Shown piece after piece: positions 5,611 through 30,879 of a stretch of 64,000 nt of DNA. This DNA is from Macrostomum hystrix (lineage: Eukaryota; Animalia; Platyhelminthes). The translations under genes were made by a program, and so were the position numbers. The stretch lies in NCBI GenBank assembly GCA_950097015.1, contig CATNEN010000039.1:14012001-14076000 (forward strand), read 5' to 3'. Within the stretch, counting starts at the first letter, position 1; each line of letters starts with the position of its first letter. The notes under the pieces are model-generated. The model did no database searches. It was not told where the DNA came from and saw nothing but the letters and a program-made list of their open reading frames with translations.

Positions 5611-7329
5611 AGTATACGGATGCAACAATTGCGAAGGATTAACTTACAATTCACTCACCCTGAGTGTCCCCTTTTCTCCTCTTGTGCTGTCAAAGATCTA
5701 GCTGGAAGTTGCGCAAAGTTGATGATGGCTTCAGCGCCACGTGGGCAGGATTAGCTAAGCTACTCAGCTGTCTTCGCTTAGCATAGCATCGCGCGTGTTT
5801 CCGACCACCTTTTGTACGGCTTGTTGAGTGTTGTTCCGCTTTTTACTGCCTTTATTATTTCTTGTTTAGAATTGGAATTTATGTTTTTTCCGCTCTCTCT
5901 ATCTCGCTCAGCCCGGCGCACGCAGGCTTCCAATATCTTCTTATTTATTGCAGTCTTCTTTTTACTTGCAAGTCGGTAGACTCCGGCAGTTTATAGTTGG
6001 AATGGAATTGCCAACCTATCCCCGAGGTTCTGGTCCGTTGAGAACAAATGAGAGACAAGACAAGGGCAGGCAGAGCGAGTTGTACAAGGCGGACAGCTTT
6101 GCTTGGTGATTAATTGCAATTTTAAGGGGGGTGGGACCTGGAATATAGAGAAAGAAATGAGCGAAAGAGACAGAAAGACAGAAGGATAGAGGCACGGACT
6201 TCAAGTAGAGCAGGTTGCGGCTGCCTGGGGTCCGGGGTAGACAGAGAAAAGGTAAAAGAAGTGCGCGGACTGGTTCTACAGGCAAAAACAACTAAACTCT
6301 GCGCGCCTTATTTAACGTGGGGAGAAAGAGTAGGGTTGTGTGTGGAAAGGGCTGAACGAGAGGATGGCCCGGTGGCAGGCAGGAGGGGAGAGCGGTTAGA
6401 AAGCAAAACCCCGGCTAAGCCAATAAAAATCGTGAGACGGGTCCGGAGTGAGAGGGGTGCCGCGGAGGGGGTAGAGAGCCAAGCATTCCTTTTCTAACCC
6501 GCACTGCCCTGACTCCGTAAAAACGCCAGCATTGAGGCGGGCTTTCGGGAAGGGAATGGAAGGGCGGTAGGGTCTTAGGAGAGGGCAAGTCCCCCCGTCC
6601 CAGCTAAGGTCAGAAAGAGACCTCGCGCGCGCACATTTACGCCAGTTCTGTTTTACACACACAGGCACACACACACATATCCAGGGCCCGCGAACTGGGC
6701 CAGCGGCGGCTCACCCTGGATCGGCTTTTCATAGCCCCAATCCAGGCCCCAGCTACATTCCTCCCGCTCGCCTTCTCAGTCGCAATCTCTCTCTTTTACC
6801 TCTAAAAGTACAATGAGCGCAAGGCGACGTGGTGGATAGTGGAGCTGCACGACCTCCCAGGGTCGCTAAGTATCTCCCTCCAGGGTCCGTCTTGTAGTGC
6901 ACGCGCCCGATCAGTGCAGTGCAGTTTGCATCTCTATCGTTTGAAATCAGCACAGACTCAGTGTTTCCACATGGCCGTGGTCAGACACTTCGTTTTAAAG
7001 TCGTCAATCGCGCCGCGTCATTTACTTTTGCATTTTGCCAGAAGGAAGCAATCAATTGATAAATAATCACCTGCAAAATGCCGCTTAATGCAATTATGCA
7101 TTTAATGATTCTCCTTATTCAAAATACATACTCGGAGTACTGAAAATTGACGCCTTACTTGCCCTAATTCTGCAAGATGTCTTGACAACTACTCAGCCCT
7201 CCTGCTCGATGTCTTCAGGTAGATGTGTTTTTAGATTCCTTAAGATCTGTCGTAGATCACTCACAGTTTTAATGCATTAATGCTCACAAAATTGCTCACA
7301 AAAAGGAGCCTTGATCTACTTTCTAAGTT

Positions 7330-8640
7330 TCTAGTTTCTCAATGGGGCATTTCTAGTTTCTCACTGGGATGTTCCTTATTTCTCAATGGGATATTTATAG
7401 TTTCTTAATGGGATATTACTATTTTCTCAATGGGATGTTTCTTGTTTCTCAATGGGGCATTTCTAGTTTCTCAATGGAATATTTCTAGTTTCTCACTGGG
7501 ATGTTCCTTATTTCTCAATGGGATATTTATAGTTTCTTAATGGGATATTACTATTTTCTCAATGGGATGTTTCTTGTTTCTCAATGGGATGTTTCTAGTT
7601 TCTCAATGGAATATTTCTAGTTTCTCACTGGGATGTTCCTTATTTCTCAATGGGATATTTATAGTTTCTTAATGGGATATTACTATTTTCTCAATGGGAT
7701 GTTTCTTGTTTCTCAATGGGATGTTTCTAGTTTCTCAATGGAATATTTCTAGTTTCTCACTGGGATGTTCCTTATTTCTCAATGGGATATTTATAGTTTC
7801 TTAATGGGATATTACTATTTTCTCAATGGGATGTTTCTTGTTTCTCAATGGGATATTTCTAGTTTCTCAATGGGATATTTCTTGTTTCTCAATGGGATAT
7901 TTCTAGTTTCTCAATGGGATGTTTCTTGTTTCTCAATGAGATGTTTCTAGTTTCTCAATGGGATGTTCCTTATTTCTCAATGGAATATTTCTAGTTTCTC
8001 ACTGGGATGTTCCTTATTTCTCAATGGGATATTTATAGTTTCTTAATGGGATATTACTATTTTCTCAATGGGATGTTTCTAGTTTCTCAATGGGATGTTC
8101 CTTATTTCTCAATGGGATATTTCTTGTTTCTCACTGGGATGTTCCTTATTTCTCAATGGGATATTTATAGTTTCTTAATGGGATATTACTATTTTCTCAA
8201 TGGGATGTTTCTTGTTTCTCAATGGGATATTTCTAGTTTCTCAATGGGATATTTCTTGTTTCTCAATGGGATATTTCTAGTTTCTCAATGGGATGTTTCT
8301 TGTTTCTCAATGAGATGTTTCTAGTTTCTCAATGGGATGTTCCTTATTTCTCAATGGGATATTTCTTGTTTCTCACTGGGATGTTCCTTATTTCTCAATG
8401 GGATATTTATAGTTTCTTAATGGGATATTACTTTTTTCTCAATGGGATGTTTCTTGTTTCTCAATGGGATATTTCTAGTTTCTCAATGGGATATTTCTTG
8501 TTTCTCAATGGGATATTTCTTGTTTCTCAAAGGGATATTTTTAGTTTCTCAATGGGATGTTTCTTGTTTCTCAAAGGGATGTTTCTAGTTTCTCAATGGG
8601 ATGTTTCTAGTTTCTCAGTGGGATATTTCTAGTTTCTCAA
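7330..8640. repeat. 22-bp minisatellite (GTTTCTCAATGGGATATTTCTA)n with higher-order variants
   Basis: Tandem 22-mers; a recurring order of variants gives a ~110-bp higher-order unit. Confidence 0.95.
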
Positions 8641-9125
8641 TACAGGGGTGGGAACTAGACCATAGTTCCTTTTATTTTAATACGTAGAATCCCAGACGAG
8701 ACACAGGCATCAGCCATAAATTAAAATATGGCCCCTGCAAATTTAAAGCTATGCAAGTTTTGCCAGTGAAAAAAAAAGAAACATTTTAACAAGCATTTTC
8801 ATGTCTGGTAAAATACACATCTAAAACCCAGCAGTTATCATTGAGAATCTAGTACAGAAAAATAGCCATTAAAAAGCTTTCAACAAATAATGTATTTCTG
8901 AAGTAAGAAAAAATTAAAGCAAATTAAAATTATCTTAACTTTGAAGACCATTGTCTAATAAAACCATCTTGTGAAACTGAATTGAGCAGATTACGAAAGG
9001 CGCTACGTAGAAAGCAAAAAAGCAAAGTAGAAAAAGCAAATTAATAAAAAGAGAATGTGTCAGAATGTAGATCAGCCAGAACATCACAGAAAACCACCGT
9101 TAACTCATCCAGATAATCTCGATCA

Positions 9126-10248
9126 TCACCACTGTTGGGCGTAGTTTATCGACTGAAAGTACAGACAAGTGTTGATAATACAAAATCACTTTCAAATTAG
9201 CTTATATTTCTACTGGTCAGTAGCTATATTAGCACATGAAGCATTAACTGAAAGAAACCGTTAGTAATATTGAAGGCTAGAAGATGCAGCGGGCCCACTG
9301 CCAAAAAATAAACGATGATAGAATGTGTAGTGGCGGTGATCATTTATTCAAGGCTAAGACATACTACACACGCGCATTATTCTATGGCCTAAACGAGTCC
9401 CAGAATCACATCTCTATGGCCAATCTTTGAAGATAACTAGGACTATGAGCGGTACGCAATAATCGCGACGCAATGATTTGGCCATAAAATAATATAGCAC
9501 AGATTCTAAATTACCTATATTATTCTATTATTTTAATATAGAATCTGTGTAATATTAATATAGTGTCCGAAGCCCTCCTGCAAACACTTAATAGCATATT
9601 ATCATTACCGCGCTTAGTCATAATGGAAGCAAGCATCTCAAGAACTAAAACTCCTTGTAGTGGATCTAAACAAACTCACTGTGAAACGATTAGGCAGCTT
9701 AGCGGAATAGTCGGCCGTATTGTTATCAGCGGCAGCGGCGGCGGCTAAATCGGCGTGGCGCTTCGCGGCCGAGTCGACGGCCGCCTGCTGAGCGCGCAGT
9801 TCGCTGTCAAATGTGGCCTTCATCGACGGATCGCAGCCCGCAGCCTGGTAAAGATTTAATTGGCTGTCACAATTTTCTAAATAACAATAAGCTGAGAATG
9901 CAATTACAATACGAAGAGAAACTTGCACATGCACGTCTAGCTGAATTGCTTTACATCAGTCCTTTATATATAAATATTAAGATGAGTCACCTTCTTTAAT
10001 ATTTTTTTAGCTTATGAAAAACTCTTCCCGACGGCCGCGAGATAAATTGTCCAATGACAGTTAGCGACCTTGAAACACGCACATTTTGCATGATTGGTTC
10101 GCTTAAGAAATTTGCAAATAGAGAAGAACGAGCGGAATTCCTTAGAGAAGAAAATCACAGAGACCTGCATCTGCTGCTGCGCATAGGCCCTCCGCTGATA
10201 CTGACGCTCACGGCGCATCGCCTCCCAGTGCTGCTGATTAGCCGACAT
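9126..10248 (-). CDS. Hypothetical 91-aa protein, 3 exons (10248-10165, 9844-9680, 9152-9126)
   Basis: All junctions phase 0 with GT-AG ends (first donor gtctct is weak, second is gtgagt). Product MSANQQHWEAMRRERQYQRRAYAQQQMQ-AAGCDPSMKATFDSELRAQQAAVDSAAKRH...RFT-SINYAQQW*. GC-rich exons in AT-rich flanks. No family recognised. Confidence 0.55.
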
Positions 10249-11060
10249 GGCAGCTGCAACTAAAAACGAAACGGTGGGCAGATTGACAACACGGGTTACG
10301 ATGAATTCAGCCCTGATTAATCTACCAGTCTCACTTTACTCTCTGCCTAGCACCGATGATAAAAAACATTTCCCACTCTTTTTACTCTAACTTTTACTAT
10401 CATAGCAACTCAAAATAAAGAAATTTATGAATGAAAAAAGTCTTGGCAATAGCGAACATACAAACCCAGCTGCAGCTGTTTTGGTCGCAATTGTATTGCA
10501 GTTTTAATATGCCATTATTAATATATTTTATTCAAGTCACAACATATTCGATCAAATACAATCATTTTTTCATTGTCTTTATCTTCATTGGAAACAAATA
10601 CGAAATTATGCCTTTCTACTTTATTAGTTCGACAACATGAACTCAACTCGGGTGACGACTTGAAAACTAATGGCAATTTTACACCTATAATTGATCTGTG
10701 TACTAACAAAGTACATTATACAAGTCACGAGCACTTCTTACAGAGAAACATATATTCGAATAATATACACGATCAGTACAATAATACAGAAATATATTGT
10801 CAATATAAAAAAGGCATAATTACTTATTATACTCGAACTAAACTAAAATGATAATAGGAATGTGAAGCTGATCAAAACACTGCTCCGCGGCGTATTCTAT
10901 AAAATAGAACCACTACATTTTGTCACATATTATCAATCTGCTTGTGCTCAGAATGAACTGAAACTCCAATTCTTGTCGACCATGACTGAACTTCTAAACA
11001 CACCGCAGGTGTTTGTACGTTAAGAGACGATAATTGTACTAATTGTGCAACACTGTGTAG

Positions 11061-11719
11061 CAGGGGTCGGCAAACTCCGGCCCGCGGGCCAGATGCGGCC
11101 CTCGCAGCTCCCAAATCCGGCCCGTTGCCCCTTCTGACATCTACAGTGTCCTGTTTCATCTCTCTCGTGTCTTATCTCTCCCGTGTCTTATCTCTCCCGT
11201 GTCTAATCTCTCCCGTGTCTCATCTCTCCCGTGTCTAATCTCTCCTGTGTCTCATCTCTCCCGTGTCTAATCTCTCCCGTGTCTCATCTCTCCCGTGTCT
11301 AATCTCCCCCGTGTCTCATCTCTCCGGTGTCTAATCTCTCCCGTGTCTAATCTCTCCCGTGTCTTATCTCTCCCGTGTCTTATCTCTCCCGTGTCTCATC
11401 TCTCCCGTGTCTAATCTCTCCCGTGTCTCATCTCTCCCGTGTCTAATCTCCCCCGTGTCTCATCTCTCCGGTGTCTAATCTCTCCCGTGTCTAATCTCTC
11501 CCGTGTCTTATCTCTCCCGTGTCTTATCTCTCCCGTGTCTAATCTCTCCCGTGTCTCATCTCTCCCGTGTCTAATCTCTCCCGTGTCTAATCTCTCCCGT
11601 GTCTCATCTCTCCCGTGTCTCATCTCTCCCCTATCTCATATTTATACAGTCAATGCGGCCCGCTGTCGTCTTTTAGGTTCTCTCTTTGGCCCGCCGGCAA
11701 ATAAGTTTGCCTACCCCTG
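11061..11719. mobile_element. hAT (Charlie-like) MITE carrying an internal 16-bp minisatellite, copy 1
   Basis: TIRs CAGGGGTCGGCAAACT / AGTTTGCCTACCCCTG; 8-bp TSD CTGTGTAG/CTGTATAG (1 mismatch); interior (GTCTAATCTCTCCCGT)n; second copy at 35202. Confidence 0.9.
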
Positions 11720-11835
11720 CTGTATAGCATGACAACAACTAATTAACCACACAAAAAATAACTTAGATTTGTGGATTGAACTGCAATAACAGCTCCTAAT
11801 TTTCGACGATGCCGCAACCAAGCCAGGAACAGTAG

Positions 11836-12234
11836 TTAGAAAAAGTATTTGTGAGGCTCTGTTACAGGCATTCTGGACTCCAATGATCGCTGTAGAATCT
11901 CATTAGTTAGTGGCGGTGGTAGGCGGCCCTCCATATTAAGTGTGCGGTCCATGTAGCCGAGGGCGAAAATCTGTGCCGCGGTGCAGTCGTTGTTAAATTG
12001 CAGCAGCAGGGCCAAGCGCAGATGGCAGCGGCACTCTTTGCGCAGCATTTTTAAATAGCGCAACTGCAATTCGTCTATGGCAGCAACATTGGACCAATCC
12101 GGATAGCAGCTAGTCTCTAGGAACAGCACGCAGACTAGTAGCAACTTCTCTCGTCTGGTGACGCCCAATTGACTATAACGGCGGCAAATTGTACGACATC
12201 GCGGATCGATTCTGGGTAAGCGGTAGCTGTTGGC
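11836..12234 (-). CDS. Nuclear receptor (ERR/NR3-like), last exon: C-terminal half of the ligand-binding domain
   Basis: gctcag|ANSYRLPRIDPRCRTICRRYSQLGVTRREKLLLVCVLFLET...LRLALLL...LNMEGRLPPPLTNEILQ...*; phase 0, in frame with the exon ending at 19197; resembles ERR helices 7-12 (LEGKVPMHKLFLEML region). Confidence 0.75.
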   Translation of the reverse strand, partial: ANSYRLPRIDPRCRTICRRYSQLGVTRREKLLLVCVLFLETSCYPDWSNVAAIDELQLRYLKMLRKECRCHLRLALLLQFNNDCTAAQIFALGYMDRTLNMEGRLPPPLTNEILQRSLESRMPVTEPHKYFF

Positions 12235-12782
12235 CTGAGCAAAAATTAGTGGACACTTTCTAAATGAAAATTTGAATAATGTAAAAGGTAACGTAATTCA
12301 AACAAAATTTCACAGGGGTATTAACCCCCAATCTGCGTCTAAGCGTTCATTTATGGTTTATTGTTAAATGGAATGAACGATTTTATCTTTCAATCTTCCA
12401 TGCATTCATTTTTTGAAACGTACTTTGTACCTGTCGCAAAAACTTCTCATTAAATGTGTAGTGCCGCGGGCACTTTGCTCTCTGCTCTTGTTTTGGCAGT
12501 GCTCGTGTACCTGACCTGCGTCTGCAGGGTCTGGCCGGTTTGGGCCAGTTGCGCCCCACCCCATTGGCGTGTTTATTTTACTTTGCTCTCTGCTCTTGTG
12601 TAGTCGGGTGCTCATTGGCTGCCGGGCTCTATTTTCTCTCCCTCGCGCTTGAGCCCTGTTTTCTCTGTACCCGCGGTGAGCACTGATTGGCTCAGTCAGT
12701 GGCTGCCGTGCCACAGCTTTTCTGCCCCTCTCCCTCTGTCGGGGTTATTTATTGCGTGCCGCGAAGCTTGGGTACAGTGACC

Positions 12783-15700
12783 CATGGACTTCTATAAATA
12801 GAAACCTGGCTGGAAAGAAAATTTCAGAGGTTGATTTTTTCTACGGAAGGAGGCCATTGGTTTCAAGCGGAGAGGAGGCCATTAGTCTTCCATTAGTACA
12901 AAAGGAGACCTTTTGTCTTTATAGACGCCGAAACCGCTCAACCAAATCGCACCAAACTTTGCACATACCTAAAACCACCTACGCTGAGTGCAATAGGCTA
13001 CTCAAATTCCCGAAAAATCATTTCCTTCCTGCTCAAAAGTGCAAAAAACTGCTCAAAAATCGTCAAAAAAATCACTCAATTCGACATATCGTCGCCCCAC
13101 TTTGTCAGATTTTCTCCAAATTTGATCCACTTACACTTTACATGTTTTCCAACAATGCTGTCAATTTTGAACATCTCTACTCAATCCAGAGCAACGCTGC
13201 ATCATCTCAAAGTGAGTCACTTTTTGTTTTCCGAGGACAGCCACCCCAACTCCCCTCCGCCACTCTGCGGGCCAAATTTTATTACAGCCACCCCCTCCCT
13301 TCCCCGGGCGCCGAAGCCCCAGACTGTACATTGTATTTCAAGCCGTGAATGTACACAGCCCAAACCCCTAGACTGTGTACTGGCCCCCAAGCAGCACTGA
13401 GACTGAGTGCGGTGAGTGCGGTGGCGTCCCAGTGCGCAGGGCTCTCCGGTCGATATTTCTCTCCAGCCAGCCTGGGATAGAAGAAAGAGAGCATCTAACG
13501 GCCGCGGGCTAGCCGACACTTCCACTAGTTATTTCTATATAACCGGGAACTAGAGACTTCATACTCGTATTTCAATTTTCAAAGGACTCACTTAGCATAT
13601 TCCAAGTTCGACAAAAGTTCTGCAAGTTTAGCTATGGTTTTCAAGTGTTCTGCTTACGGCTGTAAAAGTGGCTACTCTAACAGTGAAACACCCGACACTG
13701 TGAGTTTCCATGCATACCCTCTGAAAAACCCAAGTCTTCTTGAAAAATGGAAGAGGGCAAATCCTATAATGGATTTCGAACCGAGCAAGCACTCCCGTAT
13801 TTGTTCGCTTCACTTTGCTCCCGAAGACTTCGTGGAAGCAACGCGGGACACTAATAACTACCGCAAGAAGGACAATGGTGGCCTGCTGAAGAGACGTTAC
13901 CTAATGCCGGAAGCAGTGCCAAGCATCTTTCTGAATGCACCGGTTTACCTGTCCACTAAACCGAAAGAAGCCCGCAGCACATGCGCTGCATCAGCATCTG
14001 CACGCATGGAAAACGACAATTCACGTCTGCAGGATCAAATTAAGGACTTCTTTGCCTCCGATTCCATCACTGACGTCTCTTTGGAAAAGATCCAGGAGCT
14101 GCTTCACTCTGAGAAGAGTCGACCAGCTGGCTTTAATATAAGCATTTGCTATGAACAACTATGCATTTATATGCTAGAAAGGAAGCAAGTTTGTCGGGTT
14201 GCGTGCTCCATCGACATCGGATCAGACAAAACTGTCGCGATTGGCTTGCATGGCAAGGCACTGACGAAGGAAAAGATCAAGGATTTGGTTGGAAAGGATG
14301 GTCAGGTGTCTAGTTTGAGTGACATTCTTAATTTGATGGCACGAGTGAAGAACCTAAAGGAAGATATGGAGAAGTCAGCATCCGATATTCCTGTGGAGAT
14401 GTCTCAGAAGCAGTCCGATTTCTTCCTGGACATGGCTGAGGACAACCTGACAAGCGCTCTGCAGTGGCAGGAAAACCGATCAGTGGCTTTCTTGCGAGAA
14501 CAACTCAAGCTGACTCGAAAGCCAAAGTCCGGCAGGACCTACTCCCAACAGCTGATTATCTTCTGTTATGTTATCTACTCTCTAAGTGCTGCTGCCTATG
14601 GAGCTCTCCGTCAGCAAGACATTCTGAACATTCCATCGGAGCGGACTTTGCGAACGATTACCAGAAAGGTCGGGAAGGATGGACTGGGCCCACAAAGTTA
14701 CCTTAGCTTGCGAGCATCAAAGCTCAGCCAGATGGAGAAGGTTGTCGTGTTAATGATTGACGAGATCTACGTTGCCAATCGCATCGAGTACTGTGCAGGA
14801 CAGATGAGCGGATTGAATGATAATGGATCAATGGTGTCAACATTTTGCTGCTTCATGATAAGATCCGTTGCGGGCAAATACAGAGACATGGTGTCAATGC
14901 ATCCAGTATCAACACTGACGGCGCACAAGCTTTACGATTGGTTCGAGGATGCCATGGAAGCTCTAAGATCCCAGAACTTTTCCGTGATTGCTGTCTCCGT
15001 GGACAATGCGCCCGTGAACAGAAAATTTGTGAAAGACTTTCTATGCCAAGGAACGCTGAGGCCATCTATCACTGATGAAAACACAGGGCAACCAATTTTC
15101 ATCCTTTTTGATCCCGTCCATAATATCAAGAATATTTACAACAATTTTCAAGCCAGGAAGATCTTCCAGTGCCCACGTGTTTCCACCAATATTGAGTCTG
15201 CCTTGCAATGCCAGTTTCGATCATATTGGAGAACTGTTCCACTTGGAAGCCAAGAAGCCATTGAGACTGGCCCACAAACTAAATTCTGCTGTGCTATGCC
15301 CACGGAGCATTGAAAAGTCTTCTGTAAAGCTTGCAATGTCAGTATTCTGTGAATCCACCCACAATGCGCTATTGTACTACACACAGCACGCAGGGAAGAG
15401 TTGGTGTGATACAGCAACCTTTGTCGGCGTTGTTCTCAAGCTGTGGAAAATTCTCAACGTTAAGACACCGTCAAAGGGGATTCACAAGAGGGACATAGCC
15501 CAGGATCCGGTGCGCTCATCGCTGGACTGGAAGCTTCAGTTTCTGGAAGATTTCGCACGGTTTCTGGAGGTGAGCTCCATCCTATCTTATTTGCCTTATT
15601 GCATTCGCCTCCTAGTTCCAGAAAAAGTTATCTATTTTTTAGTAATAAGCTATACTCGTACTTTAGGTACTTTATTATATTGCATAATTTTTATAAAATC

Positions 15701-17369
15701 CTGTGCTGATAGATCATAAAAATATTTCAAACTATAAAGAATGGCTAACTGGACTATAACTATTAGAAAAAATGAAGAAGACAAAATCACTAAACCATAC
15801 AAACGAAATAATTACTTGTATACATTTTTGTACCCACTATCATCTCACAGAGCTGGGAGTCCTCCGGTCAGCGAGGCTTGTCAAGAGAGACCTTTCTTGC
15901 TTGCCAAATCACGTGCCGTGCCATCGCCGCGTGTGCAAGGCATCTGCTGGACCACGAAGGGTTTGCGTATATTCTCCTCGGCTCGCTGCAATCCGACAGC
16001 ATCGAGAGGCGGTTTGGATGGCTGCGCCAGATGTCCGGAGCTAATTACTATATATCTGCTCGGCAGCTGACGGAGAACAGTCGCAAGATCGCAGTCATCA
16101 GCTTGCTAAAGTTTTCGGAGCTCACGCTTCAGGATATCGACGATGCCATCGAGTCCAACCTGGGCAGTCGGGATCAATGTATTGAGCTTGCTCGAGAGAT
16201 TGCCAGAAAAATGGAGATGAGTATTCAGCCTCCAAGCTCAGATATCACCGTCATCTACTATGTAAGTGGCGCCATCGCAAGGAAGCTTGTTTTAAAAAGG
16301 CGTGGGTGCGAGGCATGTCGTGAAATTCTCATCGAGTCCGATATCCTGCCGCCCCTGGAAGTTGATGGCTGCGTTCAGCCAACTGCCGCCGCCTTTCTAG
16401 ATGAGGTTAATCGTGGAGGCTTGAGTAAGCCAACAGAAGTCGTCTTTGAGCTAGCGAAGCACTGTTGGCAGGCATTCGAGGAAATCCGCCGAAATGAAGA
16501 GCTTCTTCGCAGCATGCTGAGCGCTTCCAATCAAGTGCTGCTATTCTGCAACGTGGTCGATGAACTGATGGATGACAGTCAATTTCTGGAGGTTTTCATG
16601 GGCAATACTATGTGCACCAAGGGCCATGATATCAAGGAGGGCGTAGTGAAATCGTTTTTCAACTGCCTCATGAAAAACCTGGCGAAGGATCTTTCCATGC
16701 ATGGAAGTGACAGTCGCAAGCGAAAGATCGCAAAACTGACTGGCGGCGTGAACGGCAATTAGCCTTTTTCTGACAGTGATTTATTTTTCTGCTTGGACAA
16801 TCATTTCTCAGTTTTGGGTAAAGAAGACTAGAATATTCTGTAGAACTACATTTTTTTCCAAAGAGAAAATAACCAATTAATACTGCCAGAAAGTGAAATA
16901 CTAAGTCATGATCATAGAAGCCACCTGCCCCAGACACCTAGATCTTAATTTTCTCAATTGACTTGTGTCCGAATTCTTTTGTATACTTTGTCGCTTTGCT
17001 TTTAATGCCGCATCTAGCTTTCTGTTTAAAAAAATCGTGGCTTTTTGCAGTGTCTAGCAAAATGAACTTAAATTTTAATGCTGAAAATCACGACATTTTC
17101 GAATTTAATTGTTCACCCCCGCTCTTCATGTTTCAAAAGCACTGTGAAATACAGGTTTCATTGCAACGTTAGGTTAGGTTCAATTTCTGACTGCTCATAT
17201 TTTACTCTTTAGAGTTCCGATCTTATAATTTAGAGCCGCATTTAGACAAATACGTTACAAAACAAAGCGTTAAAATAATGCAAACACGGCATTGTCGGTA
17301 AGGTTGGCCTCCTTTTGTAGAAGGCCAGGGGAGCCTTCCAGTCCAGGTTTCTATTTATAGAAGTCCATG
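12783..17369 (+). mobile_element. Full-length P-superfamily (THAP9/Galileo-like) DNA transposon
   Basis: Perfect 27-bp TIR CATGGACTTCTATAAATAGAAACCTGG at both ends; 7-bp TSD AGTGACC; encodes a THAP transposase. Confidence 0.93.
13634..16762 (+). pseudogene. THAP-domain P-element-type transposase; exons 13634-15569 and 15851-16762, one frameshift near 15175
   Basis: N-terminal THAP zinc finger (CSAYGC...W...CSLHF...AVP); motifs MIDEIY, VSVDN, FDPVHNIKN, QSDSIERRFG; phase-0 intron gtgagc...ctcacag; one extra base at TGCCCACGTGTTT shifts the frame. Confidence 0.88.
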
Positions 17370-18834
17370 AGTGACCCTTCTCCTCCCCTCTCGCCTGTCT
17401 TCGCGCGTGAGAACTGAAGGTCTATAAGCGACAATAGCTATAGCGAGAAAACTAAATAAGTGTAGTTTCTGTTCTTTTGACTGAAGAGTTCACGTGAGGC
17501 TACTCACGAAGATAGACAGTTATCTAAAGTTAGTTAGTCTCTTGCTGCGAAGACTTGATTCTTTGATTACCCGTCGAGCCTGTGAGTAAACTTCAGCATC
17601 CGACTGTGTCACTCTAAATAGAGACGAAGCACGCCACGACTTCGGCAACCGGTAAGCAACGTCTTTGAGTTAGTCCTTTCCTCGGGAGCTGTCAGACTCG
17701 CCTCAGTTAGGAGCTGCGTGCCAGAGCGTCATCACGCCGGTAGTTAAGTGTGGCTGTGTGCTCATTTCGGTATATCACTATACTCTTACTAATACTTATT
17801 AGTAGTACGGACTATAGAAGCGCTAGTGAGTGTCACTGCACCACTTGCCGCAGCGCAAAGTCTGAGCGCCATAGCGCCAGGCCTAGCAACTCTTATCGCA
17901 GGGCATCACAACGCCTGCCCGTAAACATAGTCACACGAGGCAGAGCGTCACAACGCCTGTCGAGTACCATTCACCCTAATAGTACCACGGGCTGGGAACC
18001 CAACCGTCCCGTAGTCACTACAAATGTAAAAATAAATAGAAATAAAATAAGCCAAGTTGTACAGCCTCAGCTATTGCGTGGTACGTACAAGGCTTGTGCA
18101 CATCTGTTCAGTACGTCGAATAGGCAGAATGCCACAACCAACAAATGTTCTATCCCAGCTGATGCTGCTACCTATTTTACAACTGTATGAACTAAAGCAA
18201 TTATAGATTACTTGTCTAAATCAATGAAAAAATATGTTTCCCTTAACCTGAGATTCAGTCAAAAACCCGAAGCTTTGACATGGAAGAACAATAAAACTGG
18301 ATTGTTTATAAAATATCGCTTTTTAGGTCCGAGCCATAGACAAGAATGGACCAGAATAGGAAATTCTGAGCTTCTTGTGTTGCTGGTGGTTGTCTATGGC
18401 TTTGGGGTTCTATGGCCAAAACTGCCGTTTCAGTCTAGTCATTTGGAATTCTGGGAGCACAAGTCTCATACCACCAAAGATGTAACCCCCACTTGCACTA
18501 GACAATAAGTCTATGGTCAAGTTTTGAATGTCATTTCTTCCAACGGTGCAATAAATGATAAATTTGCACCGCATCGGCACTTATTTGTACGTACAAATGT
18601 GTACCGTGTACCGTCGTCAACAAGCGTCTTTTTTAAGTAATAGATATCGTATTTCTCATTCATACATATACCCTATATTTTATTCCTAGCCTGTGCTAGG
18701 ATGCTTGGAACAAGTGCAAACGTTGCTTAGCATAACCCTCCACATACATGCTGACTGATGATATGGTACTGTACAAGGTACAAGCGTACACTTTGTGTGC
18801 TTTAATATAAAAAATTTATATTAATAATATTATG

Positions 18835-19075
18835 CAGGGGGCAATTCTGCCCATTTCGCTGACTCCTGAGCACACACGCACACATGTGTGTACATCTGCC
18901 CTGACTTTATAGTCGTCAGGCAGTGTACACTCTTGCTGTGCCTTGGACGTTGGCACTCAAGGGCGATATTACACAAGCTCACAAGCCTCTCTTCGAAACG
19001 AATGAGGCTTCGTCGCGAAATCGAGCTCAAGTACCTTTGCGCGAGATGCAAACGCGTTAAACACTCTGCAACGAT
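18835..19075 (-). mobile_element. tRNA-derived SINE family 1 copy
   Basis: Homologous to the TSD-flanked copy at 62582-62954. Confidence 0.8.
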
Positions 19076-19196
19076 TTGCCACTCCTCTTGGAAATTACTC
19101 TCTTAAAAATAAAGTCTGCTTTAAACTAATCAAATCTTTCAGGCTATCATCAACAAAGAAGAATATTTATAGCCCCTTATTTTGTAGATATTTCAC

Positions 19197-19898
19197 CTGC
19201 GCTTCGCTGAGTAGAAAATTCTGACAGAAGTAGAGCGTATCCGAATAGGGGTGCGAATTGTAGCAAATCTCAATCAGCATCACAATCATCCAGCGACGCT
19301 GAATAAGCGCCATCCGGTCAGACAGGTCCAACTGGCTGAAACCAACCAGCTGTTTGGCCCAGTCGACCAGACTGGCCAAGAAGCCGTCGCACGTCAGCGT
19401 CACCGAGCGAATCACCCGCTCTTCCAGCGCCAGCGCTTCAAGGCCAGATAGGTCAATGCTGTACTGCGCGATCTGGGCTACGAGCTCTTCAGTGTTATCG
19501 GCATCGACGCGTACGTTTTCAGCATCGACCTGGCGAGAGCCAGCGGCAGCCGGAGCTATAATGGCAGCCTGATCGTCGCCTAAGCACTCGCCCAGCGATC
19601 TAACTAGCTGCGGTCGCATTCCAACGCGGAGGCATTTGCGAAATCTGCAGTAGCCGCAGGCTCGTGTGCGCTCAGACACCAGGGCACAATGGCGCGCCAT
19701 TCGCATGCAGGCGTAGGCTAGCGAATGCTGCACTGTGCGCTTAAAAAACGATTTGCAAGCGTGGCAAGTGACGGCGCCGTAGTGACAGCCAGCCGGTCTA
19801 TCGCAGCCGCACACGGAGCAAAATGAGGCCGAGTCATTAGTCAGCTCGACTGGCTGCTTGACCGACTCGGGTCGCTTGGGTTCCCGCTGCTTAGGCTG
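19197..19898 (-). CDS. Nuclear receptor (ERR/NR3-like): C4 zinc-finger DBD plus N-terminal half of the LBD
   Basis: ttttcag|QPKQREP...CSVCGCDRPAGCHYGAVTCHACKSFFKRTVQ...CGYCRFRKCLRVGM; LBD signature WAKQLVGFSQLDLSDRMALI...W; NSHPYSDTLYF resembles ERR RSLPYDDKLVY; donor gtgaaa at 19196. Confidence 0.92.
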
Positions 19899-19970
19899 CT
19901 GAAAATTGACGAGATTGATATTTCAGTTAAAATACCAAATTCAAAATCCCTGGTATTCAAAATCCCAAGT

Positions 19971-20226
19971 GAGGAGGCAATTCTGCCCGTATCGCTGACT
20001 CCTGAGCACACACGCACACAGATACCGTACACAGGCACCCGCTCACACAGGTGTGTACATCTGCGTCAGTGTACATTTGCAGTGCTTTCACCGCGCTTTG
20101 AAGGTTGGCCCTCAGGGCATAAATTGCACGACAAGCCCCCAGGCCTTCTCTCTGCAACTGCACCCGAAATGAATGTGGCCTCACCTGCACGGAATCGAGC
20201 TTGGACCTTGGTGCGAGAGGCAAACA
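19971..20226 (-). mobile_element. tRNA-derived SINE family 1 copy
   Basis: Same body and B-box region as the other family 1 copies. Confidence 0.8.
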
Positions 20227-20344
20227 ATAGTTATAATGTTCTTAATATAACAATATAATTATTGTTTATTACCACATAATTTAATTTTTTAAGTTTAAAA
20301 TGCAATAATATTAACGCGCTTTGGGCTCATGATTTTAAAGTAAG

Positions 20345-20455
20345 GAGTTCGATTCCTGACTCCAACTGGAGTCTTTTAGCAAGACATGGGTACCAGTATT
20401 AGCTGGGGTAATTAAGGTTGGGTGCGGCGCCCCCCAGTCCATGGACTGAACAGAA
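20345..20455 (+). mobile_element. tRNA-derived SINE family 2, deleted copy
   Basis: GGAGTTCGATTCCTGACTCC B box and ATGGGTACCAGTATTAGCTGGGGTAATT...CCCCAGTCCATGGACTGAAC, shared with 61774-61955. Confidence 0.7.
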
Positions 20456-20935
20456 GTCACAGAACTGAACAACAGCTTAGGCTGTGCTATCGGCTTCACA
20501 TCAGGCTCAATAGGGGCAGGTGTAATAAAATAAAAAGTCACTAAACAAACTGCCTGACAAAATATTCGGTTTTTAGTGATCTAAAAAAATCTTAGAGCGC
20601 TTAACATAGCATCTGAGATTAAAATTATGGACCTGAAGACATTCAATATTAGCGTAAAAATAGAATTATAGCTATTATATTTGTTTAGGCGAGCAGATAA
20701 GCTAATTCTGAATAAAGCACATATTAGAGTTTGGGCTACTGGTGCCCAATCAGAGCGGTTCTAAATTATAAAACCACTTCAGATGCAGCTGAAGTGATTA
20801 TGTCAATGGGCATAATAAAAAACAACAAACAACAGGTTTGTATGAATTTTACTGGCTGCCAAATGCACTGAAGATACTTTTGCTGACAAAGAATTCTTAT
20901 TCTTGTAAAAGTATAAACCTTAAAGCTTGTGAAAA

Positions 20936-21275
20936 CTAGCTGTTGTGCTGTAGTGCCGACATCTCGCCGGCAGTCTTTAGCGTTGGAGCTGCAGCCGGGC
21001 TATTGTCAGACTGATTAGAAGCTGGGCCTAGTTCGCAGCAGCTCTGCCGCACGCTGCGAAATTTGGCGCAACAATCAACCAGATTTTGCACTGCCGAGCG
21101 GCACTCCTCAGGATTGTAGTTGTGACCTGAGTTGTTTTATCGTGTTTATTATTAAATCATAAAAAATGTAATAAGTTAACTTAACTTAATCTCAAGCAGT
21201 GTGTACAGATAGGCTTAAATACTTACGCGACAGGCAATCCTGAATTGCGCAGGCAAACTTTTGACAGGGAGCAGC
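20936..21275 (-). CDS. CMC4: CMC4 / p8-MTCP1-like twin Cx9C mitochondrial protein; exons 21275-21227 and 21126-20936; no genomic ATG found
   Basis: Spliced product AAPCQKFACAIQDCLSRHNYNPEECRSAVQNLVDCCAKFRSVRQSCC...HNS* follows the human CMC4 pattern DPCQKQACEIQKCL...Y....C......L..CC. 100-bp intron gtaagt...ctcag, phase 1. Confidence 0.88.
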
Positions 21276-22478
21276 CTGCAAGGATAAATTAAAAGAAAAA
21301 CACTTTTTGCTGCACTTAAATAGTGTATTTTTTACAGAATCTTTCAGAATTTAAGAGCACACTATTGATAGTTTAAATGTCTTTTAGTTTGAGAATATAA
21401 GAATAAGGACTGGGATCTAAGCCCAGTAGGTTCAAGAATTGGATATTTTACTGAGAGTTCCGGAGTTCGATTCCTGACTCCAATTTTCCTTGAGCATGAT
21501 AGCAGTCAGCTGACAAATGCTGACCTGTGGGCCCTATGACTCAGTCCCCATTGCATTCTGGCTGTAGAATGACCATAGCCATCAAGTGTTGAGCAATCGC
21601 TAGCTCATTATTTTAGTATTGCTAATTAAATATAGCCTAGCCAAATATTTTAAAGTGCTACTTATTTTCAAAGGATAAGTGATTTTAATGCATATTTCTA
21701 GTACCTGTAGCAGGAATGCTTTAAATCTATAATTTTAGCATAAATGAAATTGGTGCAGGTGATTGTTTCTTCAATTGCAAATTTCTTAGATCTTGTAACT
21801 AAAAAACAGCAATCAACATGCCCAGTGTGCCAAGCATAGAGTTTTTTATTCAAGGTCGGAGTGAATTTTTATCTACTAGAGCACCTAATGAAGACTGGTT
21901 AGTTAATTCATATGAGCCTTAAAATTTAATACTGTTGATGCCAAGTAGAACATATACTTCAGTTCAAAAGAAGTGATAGAATAGAGAAGTTACTTATAAT
22001 ATGGATTATAGACACTATGGAATAGTGTGAAGATGTTTATAAAACCATTATTTCATTAGTTCAATATTAGCTAAACTTTATGAAAAATAGCTAAAAATCA
22101 CAAAGTCATAAATATAAAATAAATAGTTTTTGTATGTGAAAATAGCTAAAATGATAAAAAGAAATAAAACTATAGTACGTCTCTTATCTGTGTGAAATAT
22201 AAATATCACAAACTATGAAGTATTAGAATAAGATAAGCAAGTTCATAAGTCTCAATAAAGTGCCTAACAGTGAGAAGTTACATATATTCAAACTGTTTAT
22301 CTTTTAGATGAGTTTGATTGCAGATTTACTGAAATCCTGGTACAAAGAAAAAATCTAAAGATTTAGCAATTTAGTCTGCTTTGCTAAAAAGTAGACTTAC
22401 TTATGCTACTAAGTATGCTAAAAAGTAGACTCGCTAGTTTATCTAAGAGTAATATTTTGAAGAATGGACTAGCTTGAT

Positions 22479-22850
22479 CATACATGCCCAACTTCAAAAT
22501 TTCACCCATCCAGTGTGACTCACTTTTTGTCCAGATTTTCGACTTAGTTCTTCCCGATTGTGACTTATTTCCCCCAATTGTGACTTAGTTCTTCCCGATT
22601 GCAACTTACTTCCTCCCAATTGCAACCTAATTTTCAATTTGTGTATGAATTTTCTTGCCTTTTTCTCTTTTCTTCTCTTTCCTCTTTCCTCTTTCCCCCT
22701 CTCTTTTTTTCTCCCTCTTTTCTTTTCTCTTTCTCTTCCTCTTCTTTCTTTCTTCCCCCAATTTTAGTTTTTTGCCTTTTCGATTTTGCGACTTACCTTG
22801 GCAGGCAGCCTTTTCACCTGTCCAGTTTGGACGGGTGTTGGGCATGTATG
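22479..22850. mobile_element. hAT-type MITE
   Basis: 14-bp TIR CATACATGCCCAAC / GTTGGGCATGTATG; perfect 8-bp TSD AGCTTGAT; pyrimidine-rich interior. Confidence 0.9.
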
Positions 22851-24004
22851 AGCTTGATTACAATAAACAATAAATTCCACAGACTCTTTAGTATATTAGA
22901 AGGTAACACTTATAGTTTCAAGAAAACAAATGAATTTCTAATCAAAATTCAGTTTTTTCTACCATTCCGACCAGAAAAGTATCTATCCATATAAATAAAA
23001 GAATAGCAATAGTCTAAATTCATTTCACTTAAGGAACAAATTGTATCGCTTTGCTTCACCGATAAAATAAAAGGTCACGTCCGACTTAAAATTTCAAAAA
23101 AAGACTAGGTAAAAACAGCGAAATGCCAGTCGTGATAAAGATTTCGGATTGCTAACGTAATGTAAACAGTTTATCTAGATACAATAAAACAGAAAAATAT
23201 TCAACTGTCATTTCAGTTTATAACGCCGTGCTTTAAAAGTCAAGCAGCAGTTCTATTCTATGATAGTTCTTAGAAATAAAATATGTTGGAGACAAGAATT
23301 CAAACTTGCGCGAAAAATGTTTTCGCTAAATATTTTAACAATTGAACTATAGCAAAGTTATAAGAAATTTCGAGATTCTAGCATACGAACGCCAGCGAAG
23401 CAGTCCGAAAGAAAACTTTCACTTCTTATGAATTTTATTACTCTGTGTTTAATCTTACTACATACGAGCTACATGTACCACTACCGCTTAATTCTTGGCA
23501 GAAATTTATTAAAGGCAGATTTTCACGGAAAATGCAGTAGCGAGATAGAAACTTTTCACGTATTTTTCACATTAAAATGTTGTTCTTGTTTATTTTGGAT
23601 GCAGATCTAACGCTGCTTTTAATATGTCTAGCGAAATGTGTTGCTTTAATTCGAATTTTAAAAGCTTCATTTATGAAAAATTTATATTCATTCTATTTTC
23701 GTTTATTTATCATTTATCTTTCTAAATCTCCTAATAATCCTAGAAATTTGTTAAAAAGTTTTTTATTAAAGCATAAAAAACAAACAACACATTTATAAAC
23801 AAAGCAACGAATTTACTGCGTTAGTTAAGCATTTTTAACGCTACTTTGGTACTGATTTGATGAAACTCAAATTGGCAAGCCAACGCGTAGATAAATGGCA
23901 TATGTGAATGTACAATTGGCAATTACACGAGCGGCAAGGACACAGAGTTAACCGATGGGATTACAGAACAAATGGGTGGGAACAGATCGGATCGCGGATC
24001 CCTG

Positions 24005-24084: not shown

Positions 24085-24297
24085 CGAGGCAGGTAATCTT
24101 ACTGTGCGCGATGGAACACAAGGAACGCAACAGGAGGGCAAGGCAAACTATTCAATAAATAAGCTTTGAGTAGATTAAAGTTCAGAGTGGACTAAATTTT
24201 TTATTTATATACTAAAATATACACTATCCCATACGACACCCAAAATGACACTGAGACGTAAGAGTCAAAGTGACGTCTAGAGCAAAAATATTTTTTA

Positions 24298-24626
24298 TTC
24301 AATTAGACTAGTCCTAGATTCAATTAGACTAAGTCCTAGATTCAATTAGACTAGTCCTAGATTCAATTAGACTAGTCCTAGATTCAATTAGACTAGTCCT
24401 AGATTCAATTAGACTAGTCCTAGATTCAATTAGACTAAGTCCTAGATTCAATTAGACTAGTCCTAGATTCAATTAGACTAGTCCTAGATTCAATTAGACT
24501 AGTCCTAGATTCAATTAGACTAGTCCTAGATTCAATTAGACTAGTCCTAGATTCAATTAGACTAGTCCTAGATTCAATTAGACTAGTCCTAGATTCAATT
24601 AGACTAGTCATAGATTCAATTAGACT
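24298..24626. repeat. 21-bp minisatellite (CAATTAGACTAGTCCTAGATT)n immediately 3' of the MPPED-like stop codon
   Basis: About 15 tandem copies. Confidence 0.95.
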
Positions 24627-24627
24627 G

Positions 24628-24853
24628 TTAGAAGCCTGGCCTGGTCCTGGACAGCTCGGTGATTCTCGGCGCGCTTTCGTCGGCGTAGAAATCGAAGACC
24701 CCGCGGCGGCAGGCCTGCCCGTTGCCAGCATGGCCGTTGGAGAATATCACATTGTCCTTGAATTTCACGCAGTTCTCCGCTGAACCTGTCTGATGACCCG
24801 GGGAGCAGCGGCTGCCTCGACGGAGTCGCCTGCCGTATAGAAACAGCTTTGGC
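24628..24853 (-). CDS. MPPED-like metallophosphoesterase-fold protein, exon 4 (last)
   Basis: ccgcag|(R)PKLFLYGRRL...VIFSNG...VFDFY...RPGF*; corresponds to MPPED RPKLHVFGHIH...FINAS...VFD; phase 2 fits exon 3. Confidence 0.75.
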
Positions 24854-24954
24854 CTGCGGGCGAGGTGGTGACCTGGCTCTGAAGACTGCTTCTTCTAAGA
24901 AATCATCTTTATCTTCCCCCCTCCTATCCTCCTTCGTCCTTCCTATCTGCACTC

Positions 24955-25680
24955 AAATCCCAAAATCCCAAGATTTTTATGTGTACTCCGATCCCAAATT
25001 CTAAAGATTCCCATCTTCACAAAAATCCCTAAATACCACAATTCCCACCTGTACTCGAATCCGAAATCCCAAGATTCACATCGGTTATCGAATCCCAAAT
25101 CCCAAGATCCCCATCTTCAAAAAATCCCCAAATCCCAAGATTCCAATCATAAAATAATCCCCAAATCCCAAGATTCCCATCTTCACAAAATGCCCATGCC
25201 CAAATCCCAAGATTCCCATCTTCACGAAATGCCCAAATCCCAAGATTCCCATCTTCTCAAAATCCCCAAATCCCAAGATTCTCATCTTCAAAAAATTTCC
25301 AAATCCCAAGATTTCCATCTTAAAATAATTCCCAAATCCCAAGATTCCAATCATAAAATAATCCCCAAATTCCAAGATTACCATCTTCACAAAATCCCCA
25401 AATTTCAAGATTCCCATCTTCACAAAATCCCCAAATCCCAAGATTCCCATCTTCACAAAATCCCAAAATCCCAAGATTCCCATCTTCACAAAATCCCCAA
25501 ATCCCAAGATTCCAATCATAAAATAATCCCCAAATCCTAAGATTCCAATCATAAAATAGTCCCCAAATCCCAAGATTCCAATCATAAAATAATCCCCAAA
25601 TCCCAAGATTCCCATCTATACACGAATACCCAATTCTCAAATTTGAAACGCGATTCCAACATTAAAAATCCCAAATCCCA
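24955..25680. repeat. ~33-bp minisatellite (CCCAAATCCCAAGATTCCCATCTTCACAAAATC)n in intron 3
   Basis: Degenerate tandem copies. Confidence 0.9.
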
Positions 25681-25709
25681 CTTTCTCCTGATTTTCTAGA
25701 CTTCCTCAC

Positions 25710-25939
25710 CTGAGCCGGCTAACCAGATCTTCGTACAATGAGCTGGCTGGCAGTGAGTGACAGACGAGCACATCCGCAGAGTCCGGCACATTGTGCCAGG
25801 CCCTTCGAGCCTCAGCCGCGGAGCTAAGGCGGCCGATACCCAAGCGACCGGCTCGGGAACCGCGAGCCACGCCGTGGAATCTGACGCCCTCGATAACGCA
25901 GCCGCTGTCGCGAAGATAAATGCAATCAGGAAGCAGCGC
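25710..25939 (-). CDS. MPPED-like protein, exon 3
   Basis: gtcgcag|ALLPDCIYLRDSGCVIEGVRFHG...AWHNVPDSADVLVCHSLP...VSRL(R)|gtgagg; matches MPPED CIYLQDS...G..IYG...W..IP...DIL.THGPP. Confidence 0.85.
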
Positions 25940-26029
25940 CTGCGACAAGGAGGAGAATCCGGGATTGGGATTTTAGGATTCTGGGATTCACATTCTCTTA
26001 ATTTGACAAAATATTATTCAGATTCTCTC

Positions 26030-30840: not shown

Positions 30841-30879
30841 ATTCCGGAAATTCAGGGGATTTTCCAATCCCCAGCCCAC

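What the first reader, a model, noticed from the sequence alone, without database searches (positions are those of the whole stretch)
9126..21355. Candidate operon in which two adjacent genes lack a genomic start codon (spliced-leader-donated AUG)
Seen: CMC4 (acceptor at 21276) and the nuclear receptor (acceptor at 19899) are co-oriented and about 1 kb apart. Each ORF starts right after a polypyrimidine-CAG acceptor in phase 0. The CMC4 frame upstream hits TAA at 21353-21351 with no ATG. The receptor's first in-frame ATG lies after zinc finger 1. The best upstream ATG+donor candidate (22845-22797) is phase 1 and inside a MITE. The next gene (ATG 10248) also has an acceptor a few nt before its ATG. 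Known: flatworm spliced leaders end in AUG, which can act as the initiator. Adding ATG gives MAAPCQKFAC..., nearly the N-terminal length of human CMC4 (MPQKDPCQKQAC). Inference: a polycistron linking a mitochondrial intermembrane-space protein, an ERR-like receptor and an orphan, with translation dependent on trans-splicing. ERRs are known regulators of mitochondrial genes.
Basis: partly seen in the sequence, partly recalled or inferred. Interest (0 to 1): 0.85.

Follow-up and report, generated by a model that had tools for sequence, protein, structure and literature searches.

The report
Two flatworm genes borrowing leader start codon
In the flatworm Macrostomum hystrix, the only CMC4 gene and the nuclear-receptor gene next to it have no start codon of their own and most likely take it from the AUG that ends the trans-spliced leader; this habit has been known in flatworms since 2006, so the case is well supported but ordinary.

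Summary
The window is from the Macrostomum hystrix assembly (220 Mb, 42 contigs). Both spliced-leader (SL) gene classes in this genome end in ATG|GT.

Transcriptome-like contigs from three runs start exactly at the two predicted acceptors, 21276 for CMC4 and 19899 for the receptor. Each carries 22 or 21 extra non-genomic letters, which is what a shared leader leaves in a 31-mer assembly. The letters themselves were not printed, so their identity as SL is inferred. The contigs also confirm the CMC4 intron, and none covers the 1.8 kb upstream of CMC4.

The M. lignano orthologues of both genes are deposited as "partial", without a Met, and start at the same place. CMC4 is single-copy here. The closest receptor paralogue has its own ATG.

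Co-transcription is plausible but not shown. The spacer is 730 nt, mostly SINEs, with some low-level RNA over it. The "ERR-like" label and the mitochondrial link are not supported, and the two genes are not neighbours in the M. lignano annotation. The third gene is not an orphan: it keeps a conserved genomic ATG, and the leader AUG would be out of frame.

The mechanism is published (Cheng 2006), and this scan has already reported the same thing at other loci of this genome (PGM3, WNK).

The parts
21276..21277 (-). AG of the CMC4 trans-splice acceptor (cctTTGCAG|G). It matches the published Macrostomum trans-acceptor motif [T/C]TNCAG.
   Evidence: Contigs in X2, X3 and X4 match the genome only up to 21276, then carry 22 further letters.
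21227..21275 (-). CMC4 coding exon 1 (AAPCQKFACAIQDCLS + 1 nt). It has no ATG. With the leader AUG it reads MAAPCQKF...
21127..21226 (-). CMC4 intron (GT..AG, 100 nt).
   Evidence: table 5: joint 21124/21225 (cut +2) in three runs.
20936..21126 (-). CMC4 exon 2 coding part, including the TAG stop. It carries the Cx9C motifs.
   Evidence: Pfam PF08991 E=1.5e-5 on exon 2; the orthologue P0001 scores 47.6 bits against a cut-off of 28.9.
20629..20935 (-). CMC4 3' UTR as far as the contigs reach (ends at 20629, 20632 and 20674).
   Evidence: table 8.
19900..20628 (-). CMC4-receptor spacer, 730 nt. It contains a high-copy 258-nt repeat (19968-20225) and a SINE-like repeat (about 20315-20516).
   Evidence: A 202-nt X4 contig lies on 20315-20516 with no mismatch, while the other genomic copies listed (40 of 1,096 candidates scored) are at most 81% alike over their length.
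19899..19900 (-). AG of the receptor trans-splice acceptor (aatTTTCAG|C).
   Evidence: The 1,293-nt contigs in X2, X3 and X4 match up to 19899, then carry 21 further letters.
19197..19898 (-). Nuclear receptor exon 1: N-terminus, DNA-binding domain with P-box CHACKS, hinge and start of the ligand-binding domain. With the leader AUG it reads MQPKQREPK...
   Evidence: (zf-C4 E=1.9e-19; Hormone_recep E=1.3e-9).
12235..19196 (-). Receptor intron, about 7 kb.
   Evidence: the contig leaves the genome at 19196; the M. lignano protein joins SEEQ|ASSFRLPRI at the same place.
12777..17375 (+). P-element-like DNA transposon inside the receptor intron, antisense to the receptor. It has 33-nt terminal inverted repeats and ORFs at 13634-15313 and 15878-16762.
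   Evidence: (THAP E=4.9e-15; TNP-like RNase H E=3.1e-12).
11836..12234 (-). Receptor last coding exon (rest of the ligand-binding domain, including the TAA stop). The contig length implies a UTR reaching at least about 11667.
11158..11630 (.). 16-nt tandem array (29.6 copies) inside a repeat between the receptor and gene 3.
10165..10253 (-). Gene 3 first exon. The likely acceptor TTGCAG ends at 10254 and the genomic ATG is at 10248 (MSANQQHWEAMRRERQYQRRAYAQQQMQ).
   Evidence: Use of the acceptor was not tested.
9680..9844 (-). Gene 3 exon 2 (55 codons).
   Evidence: M. lignano P0006, E=3.1e-10, 67% identity.
9126..9152 (-). Gene 3 last coding exon (SINYAQQW*).
   Evidence: P0006 ends SINYAQQW.
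22478..22851 (.). MITE holding the only upstream ATG+donor candidate. It is out of phase and has no RNA coverage.

Best explanation
CMC4 and the adjacent divergent nuclear receptor of Macrostomum hystrix are each trans-spliced to the spliced leader at a phase-0 acceptor (exon starts 21275 and 19898, minus strand). The leader ends in AUG, and that AUG becomes codon 1 of both proteins (MAAPCQKF..., 80 aa; MQPKQREPK..., about 367 aa). Neither gene can make its conserved protein without trans-splicing.

Shown:
- The gene structures.
- The absence of any genomic start codon.
- The AUG-ending leader genes.
- The RNA 5' boundaries at both acceptors.
- Methionine-less orthologues in M. lignano.

Inferred:
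- That the 21-22 extra letters on the contigs are leader sequence.
- That ribosomes start at that AUG.

Secondary and weaker (about even odds): the two genes, and possibly the next one, are cut out of one polycistronic precursor.
For: Leader genes:
- The SL RNA genes of this genome end ...TTGCATG|GTAAG.
- The published M. hystrix SL ends in ATG, and its authors call it a likely start codon.

RNA contigs:
- In three runs one contig covers 20629-21124 + 21225-21276 with 22 letters beyond 21276. Another, of 1,293 nt, covers 19196-19899 with 21 letters beyond 19899.
- The lengths are identical in all three assemblies.
- A simple 31-mer graph model predicts 22-25 retained leader letters. Observed: 23 and 22, counting the terminal G that also matches the genomic AG.
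- There is no contig coverage over 21281-23070.

Frames and sites:
- Frames were checked.
- Both acceptors fit [T/C]TNCAG.

Orthologues and copies:
- M. lignano CMC4 starts SSPCQKF and is deposited as "partial". Three deposited receptor proteins from M. lignano start QRESKQQ or FPQPKQRESK with no Met; the two NCBI records are labelled "partial".
- The Pfam CMC4 model starts at residue 3 of the orthologue, so no N-terminal exon is missing.
- CMC4 is single-copy in this genome.

For co-transcription:
- The genes are co-oriented with a 730-nt spacer, under the published 1-kb criterion.
- A mismatch-free contig lies on spacer 20315-20516.
- Contig depths of the two genes are similar in three runs: 11/15, 19/19 and 19/15. 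This is a weak measure.
Against: - Their identity as SL rests on length, position and analogy.
- Contigs show neither strand nor true ends.
- No translation data exist.
- No contig spans the spacer, so the polycistron is not demonstrated.
- About 60% of trans-spliced Macrostomum genes are not assigned to operons.
- In M. lignano the CMC4 and receptor orthologues sit on different contigs of 634, 656 and 264 kb.
Confidence: 0.8

Rival explanations
1. Both genes are trans-spliced and use the leader AUG, but they are separate transcription units. The receptor has its own promoter in or near the SINE-rich spacer, and its outron is what gives the weak spacer RNA signal.
For: - Most trans-spliced Macrostomum genes are not assigned to operons.
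- The modal operon spacer is about 100 nt, against 730 nt here.
- No contig spans the spacer.
- Linkage is not conserved in M. lignano.
Against: - The spacer is under the 1-kb criterion even before repeats are subtracted.
- Contig depth is similar for both genes in three runs.
- RNA is present on the spacer but absent upstream of CMC4.
Confidence: 0.45
2. A short cis-spliced 5' exon, not the spliced leader, is joined at one or both acceptors and supplies the ATG.
For: The extra 21-22 letters were not read. A very short first exon would not have been placed by the aligner.
Against: - The truncation length is the same in three independent assemblies and for both genes, as expected of a shared sequence.
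- No RNA coverage lies upstream of CMC4 for 1.8 kb.
- The only ATG+donor candidate is out of phase and inside a MITE.
- The M. lignano models, cut at mapped trans-splice sites, are Met-less at the same position.
Confidence: 0.07
3. The ATG-less state means that one or both loci are decaying or untranslated, or start at a non-AUG codon.
For: No proteomic or ribosome data are available.
Against: - The ORFs are intact and spliced, and contigs from three RNA runs hold them.
- The proteins are 65-67% identical to M. lignano proteins, with domains kept.
- CMC4 is the only copy in the genome.
Confidence: 0.03

Closest known systems
[quoted passage not shown]
   Same: The flatworm leader ends in AUG. 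The acceptor is in phase 0 with an ORF that has no start codon of its own. Translation depends on trans-splicing. That study reported the SL AUG in frame in 28% of trans-spliced transcripts, and more than 40 cDNAs that require it.
   Different: This is a free-living macrostomid rather than a parasite. Here two neighbouring genes show it, and the state is shared with M. lignano. No translation experiment exists for this case.
Macrostomum lignano SL-resolved operons (Wudarski et al. 2017, PMC5730564; Ustyantsev and Berezikov 2021, PMC8629364)
   Same: Co-oriented trans-spliced neighbours under 1 kb apart, a repeat-inflated spacer, and a [T/C]TNCAG acceptor.
   Different: Here the precursor was not observed. 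The pairing of CMC4 with this receptor is not seen in the M. lignano annotation.
Other ATG-less, leader-dependent genes reported by this scan in the same genome (PGM3 downstream of RTEL1; a WNK kinase downstream of ATP6V1H)
   Same: Same genome, same mechanism, same unresolved operon question.
   Different: Different genes. Here two consecutive genes lack the ATG, and orthologue evidence from M. lignano is added.
Caenorhabditis elegans SL1/SL2 operons
   Same: Trans-splicing resolves polycistrons and gives downstream genes a capped 5' end.
   Different: Nematode leaders do not end in AUG and do not donate the initiator. Downstream genes there use a specialised SL2. No such specialisation is known in flatworms.

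Membership tests
Flatworm mRNAs initiated at the spliced-leader AUG | The host's spliced leader ends in AUG directly before the donor. | tested here: met
   (two SL gene classes, both ...TTGCATG|GTAAG). The published M. hystrix SL is.
Flatworm mRNAs initiated at the spliced-leader AUG | The mature mRNA carries the leader joined at the acceptor. | tested here: inconclusive
   contigs of three runs end their genomic match at the AG and carry 21-22 more letters. The length fits the leader model, but the letters were not shown.
Flatworm mRNAs initiated at the spliced-leader AUG | The leader AUG is in frame, and there is no genomic AUG that could give the conserved protein. | tested here: met
   CMC4 has no Met before its Cx9C motifs. 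The receptor's first Met is after zinc finger 1.
Flatworm mRNAs initiated at the spliced-leader AUG | Translation actually starts at the leader AUG. | not testable with these tools
   Needs ribosome profiling, N-terminal proteomics or a reporter.
SL-resolved operon (Macrostomum criterion) | Adjacent, same strand, no opposite-strand gene between, downstream gene trans-spliced, spacer under 1 kb. | tested here: met
   The spacer is 730 nt, of which at least 258 nt, and probably about 460 nt, is repeat.
SL-resolved operon (Macrostomum criterion) | One precursor RNA spanning both genes, with no internal promoter. | tested here: inconclusive
   no spanning contig; a locus-specific 202-nt contig lies on part of the spacer at low depth.
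CMC4 (Pfam PF08991, twin Cx9C protein) | Match to the family profile over the Cx9C motifs. | tested here: met
Exon 2 alone scores 25.6 bits, below the 28.9 cut-off because only half the domain is there. The orthologue P0001 scores 47.6 bits over model positions 1-50.
Nuclear receptor superfamily | C4 zinc-finger DNA-binding domain plus ligand-binding domain. | tested here: met
   (PF00105 70.3 bits, PF00104 38.3 bits).
Estrogen-related receptor (NR3B) | Closest similarity to ERR over other subfamilies; ERR-type P-box. | tested here: not met
   The best matches are RXR, GR, RAR, HNF4 and NR4A2. Among DBD-only chains, NR5A2, COUP-TF, SF-1 and USP score as high as ERR or higher. The P-box is CHACKS, and each finger has one extra residue.

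The most novel reading that the evidence does not exclude
Dependence on the leader AUG is ancestral and fixed for a set of conserved Macrostomum genes. This set includes the only CMC4 gene and this receptor, both Met-less in M. hystrix and M. lignano. Such genes would tend to sit next to each other in SL-resolved operons, where constant trans-splicing lets the genomic ATG be lost for good. In addition, the two SL RNA gene classes of this genome (rDNA-linked and 5S-linked) might serve different acceptors, as SL1 and SL2 do in nematodes.
Probability: 0.15. Interest if true: 0.5.

Novelty: new member of a known kind. Interest (0 to 1): 0.25.

Why it matters
Gene models for such genes are routinely deposited as "partial" or given wrong downstream starts. 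Here that would yield a receptor without its first zinc finger, or no CMC4 at all. Recognising leader-donated starts corrects annotation in Macrostomum, a transgenic regeneration model. It also shows that some conserved genes cannot be expressed from a transgene or read by a standard gene finder without the leader. The locus does not open a new question: the mechanism and Macrostomum operons are published, and the claimed receptor-mitochondria link is not supported.

Tried and rejected
The contig letters at the two 5' ends and the M. lignano neighbourhoods could therefore not be read.
- Read laying printed only 18 of 55 loose ends, and the two of interest were not among them. Gene 3 (10.2 kb) and the receptor's last exon were never laid.
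- Run X1 gave nothing on the genes.
- Retrocopies carrying a leader-exon junction were searched for both genes in the genome. None was found.
- Rfam and tRNA scans of 9-24 kb found nothing.
- NCBIfam had nothing for the receptor or the transposon ORFs.
- The word-indexed protein search found no relative of gene 3. The exhaustive search did. Pfam gave gene 3 no family, and the Atlas gave only unnamed mollusc and rotifer clusters as leads.
- The ".g2" in the M. lignano receptor name was considered as evidence for a downstream operon position. It was rejected because name prefixes come from sequence clustering and the other copy is ".g1".
- Spliced protein models were not joined or searched whole. 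Exons were searched by reference.


Full report
**Where this is.** The window is G000:C39:14012001-14076000 of a 220,453,370-base, 42-contig assembly. That matches the Macrostomum hystrix assembly of Wiberg et al. 2023, described as about 220 Mb in 42 contigs (PMC10468722). Earlier notes of this scan name the same species.

**The spliced leader.**
- A search with the conserved leader core found about 195 copies.
- One unit of a 927-bp array, which also holds a 5S rRNA gene, reads ...CGGTCTCTTACTGCGAAGACTCTCTTTTTTGCATG|GTAAGACACCGT..., followed by an Sm-like ATTTTTG and a 3' hairpin.
- The published M. hystrix leader is CGTAAAGACGGTCTCTTACTGCGAAGACTCAATTTATTGCATG (supplement of PMC10468722).
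- The 5S-linked variant occurs 66 times exactly.
- Both classes end in ATG directly before the donor.

**Gene structures** (minus strand).

CMC4:
- Acceptor cctTTGCAG|GCT, with the AG at 21277-21276.
- Exon 1 is 21275-21227 (AAPCQKFACAIQDCLS + 1 nt).
- The intron is 21226-21127.
- Exon 2 runs from 21126 to the TAG at 20938-20936.
- Upstream in frame there is no ATG back to the TAA at 21353-21351. The only Met of the ORF lies near the C-terminus.
- Exon 2 matches Pfam CMC4. The M. lignano orthologue passes the family cut-off, with the model starting at its residue 3, so no N-terminal coding exon is missing.

Receptor:
- Acceptor aatTTTCAG|CAG CCT, with the AG at 19900-19899.
- Exon 1 is 19898-19197 (234 codons: DNA-binding domain, hinge and start of the ligand-binding domain).
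- A 7-kb intron follows.
- The last coding exon is 12234-11836.
- The exon junction is confirmed by the M. lignano protein.
- The first in-frame Met lies after zinc finger 1.

Gene 3:
- ATG at 10248; exons 10248-10165, 9844-9680 and 9152-9126.

**RNA evidence.**
- One run search found four usable runs.
- Runs X2-X4 (one 2020 study) behave as transcriptomes. Their contigs skip the CMC4 intron at GT..AG, leave the genome at the receptor donor, and leave 21281-23070 uncovered.
- In each of the three runs, one contig covers 20629/20632/20674-21124 plus 21225-21276 and has 22 further letters. One 1,293-nt contig covers 19196-19899, with 21 further letters at the 5' side and 568 at the 3' side (table 8).
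- The genomic match stops on the G of the acceptor AG. That is what a junction ...CATG|exon gives.
- I therefore asked whether the length fits. In a 31-mer graph a leader shared by thousands of mRNAs is kept only until another mRNA shares the same first exon letters. With 3,500-15,000 acceptor sites a simple model keeps 22-25 leader letters. Observed: 23 and 22, counting the terminal G.
- Identical truncation in three assemblies and in both genes points to a shared sequence rather than to gene-specific first exons.
- Both acceptors fit the trans-acceptor motif [T/C]TNCAG published for M. lignano.

**Orthologues.**
- The only close database relative of CMC4 is M. lignano PAA86398.1. It is "partial" and starts SSPCQKFACAIQDCL.
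- The receptor has three deposited M. lignano proteins: PAA84904.1 and PAA66082.1, both "partial" and starting QRESKQQ, and a UniRef model starting FPQPKQRESK. None has a Met.
- The M. lignano annotation trimmed the leader and cut transcripts at mapped trans-splice sites before calling ORFs. A Met-less start at the homologous position is what a leader-donated AUG would leave.
- CMC4 is single-copy in M. hystrix.
- The receptor's nearest paralogue (C38) has the same unusual fingers and the same CHACKS P-box, but its own genomic ATG (MNVSATEQPVAICSVC). The ATG-less state is therefore specific to this gene, not an artefact of the family.

**Operon question.**
- The contigs put the CMC4 3' end at about 20629, 730 nt from the receptor acceptor.
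- Positions 19968-20225 are a repeat with thousands of copies, and about 20315-20516 is another with over 1,000 candidates.
- By the published criterion (co-oriented trans-spliced neighbours under 1 kb after subtracting repeats) the pair would be called an operon.
- A 202-nt X4 contig lies on 20315-20516 without a mismatch, whereas the other genomic copies that the search scored (40 of 1,096 candidates) are at most 81% alike over their length. Part of the spacer is therefore most likely transcribed from this locus at low depth, while nothing is seen upstream of CMC4.
- That fits a precursor. It fits equally a receptor outron from an internal promoter, or CMC4 read-through.
- No contig spans the spacer, and contigs cannot show single molecules. 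I put co-transcription at about even odds.
- Upstream of CMC4, satellites fill most of the stretch from 24.3 to 30.8 kb. The next minus-strand ORF is at 30.8-31.2 kb, so CMC4 would be the first gene.

**What does not hold.**
- "ERR-like". Against solved structures the orthologue is closest to RXR, GR, RAR, HNF4 and NR4A2. Among DBD-only chains, NR5A2, COUP-TF, SF-1 and USP score as high as ERR or higher. The subfamily is unresolved.
- Linkage. In M. lignano the CMC4 and receptor proteins come from contigs of 633,908, 656,123 and 264,087 bases, with distant accession numbers. The pairing is not conserved as far as that annotation shows, although an unannotated copy cannot be excluded.
- With both points failing, the suggested regulatory link to mitochondria has no support.
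- "Orphan". An exhaustive search found a 100-aa M. lignano protein (67% identity over exon 2) with the same MSANQQHW start and SINYAQQW end. A language-model search points to unnamed proteins of about 100 aa in molluscs and rotifers, as leads only.
- If gene 3 is trans-spliced at 10254 or 10260, the leader AUG lies 5 or 11 nt before its ATG. It would be out of frame and open through the whole first exon. Gene 3 therefore does not share the start-codon dependence.

**Comparison with what is known.**
- All reported flatworm leaders end in AUG.
- In Schistosoma mansoni it is in frame in 28% of trans-spliced transcripts and required by more than 40 cDNAs (Cheng et al. 2006, as summarised in PMC9851317 and PMC12582326).
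- Operons and abundant trans-splicing are described for M. lignano, and trans-splicing for M. hystrix.
- This scan has already followed up the same phenomenon at other loci of this genome (PGM3, WNK) and noted further ATG-less gene pairs.
- The present locus is therefore a new, well-supported member of a known kind.
- What it adds: two consecutive genes share the state, one of them is the organism's only CMC4, and both orthologues in a second species are Met-less too.

**Limits.** The leader letters at the two junctions, strandedness, true 5' and 3' ends, gene 3 splicing and translation were not observed. Joined exon models were not searched, by rule.

Noticed in passing
L011:150-300 (G000:C39:12680700-12681700), L019 and L020; arrays at C39:12.67-12.75 Mb and on C15, C17, C42: The genome has two spliced-leader RNA gene classes. 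A 5S-linked class (...GACTCTCTTTTTTGCATG) has 66 exact copies in a 927-bp array. Both keep the donor, an Sm-like site and a 3' hairpin, but their snRNA bodies differ. Only the first is in the genome paper's table. Whether the second is used, or used for different acceptors, is open.
   Followed up: partly
window 12777-17375 (+): A P-element-like DNA transposon sits antisense inside the receptor's 7-kb intron. It has 33-nt terminal inverted repeats (94% complementary) and a 559-aa ORF with THAP and TNP-like RNase H domains, plus a 294-aa ORF. It looks intact.
   Followed up: partly
window 17537-17575 (+): A diverged copy of the spliced leader (AGTCTCTTGCTGCGAAGACTTGATTCTTTGATT...) lies just outside the transposon end. 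Contigs of all four runs cover 17500-17652, so it belongs to a transcribed repeat.
   Followed up: no
window 19968-20225 and 18836-19100; 20344-20365 and 21462-21483: Two SINE-like families flank and invade the locus. One is a 258-nt element with thousands of genomic copies and very high RNA contig depth. The other carries a tRNA T-arm-like GGAGTTCGATTCCTGACTCC.
   Followed up: partly
window 24297-30831: Satellites upstream of CMC4: 21-nt (15.6 copies), 33-nt (18.4 copies) and a 4.8-kb array of a 30-nt unit (160 copies). They separate CMC4 from the next minus-strand ORF at 30796-31221.
   Followed up: no
L013:1486-2103 (G000:C38:5420939-5424199, minus strand): The closest paralogue of the receptor has the same CHACKS P-box and the same extra finger residues, but a genomic ATG 12 codons before the first zinc-finger cysteine. 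This suggests a lineage-specific receptor subfamily.
   Followed up: partly
window 9126-10253 (-); P0006, P0010: Gene 3 encodes a conserved protein of about 91 aa (MSANQQHW...SINYAQQW). It is found in M. lignano and has no Pfam family. UniRef labels its orthologues "Cir_N domain-containing", which Pfam did not reproduce here.
   Followed up: partly
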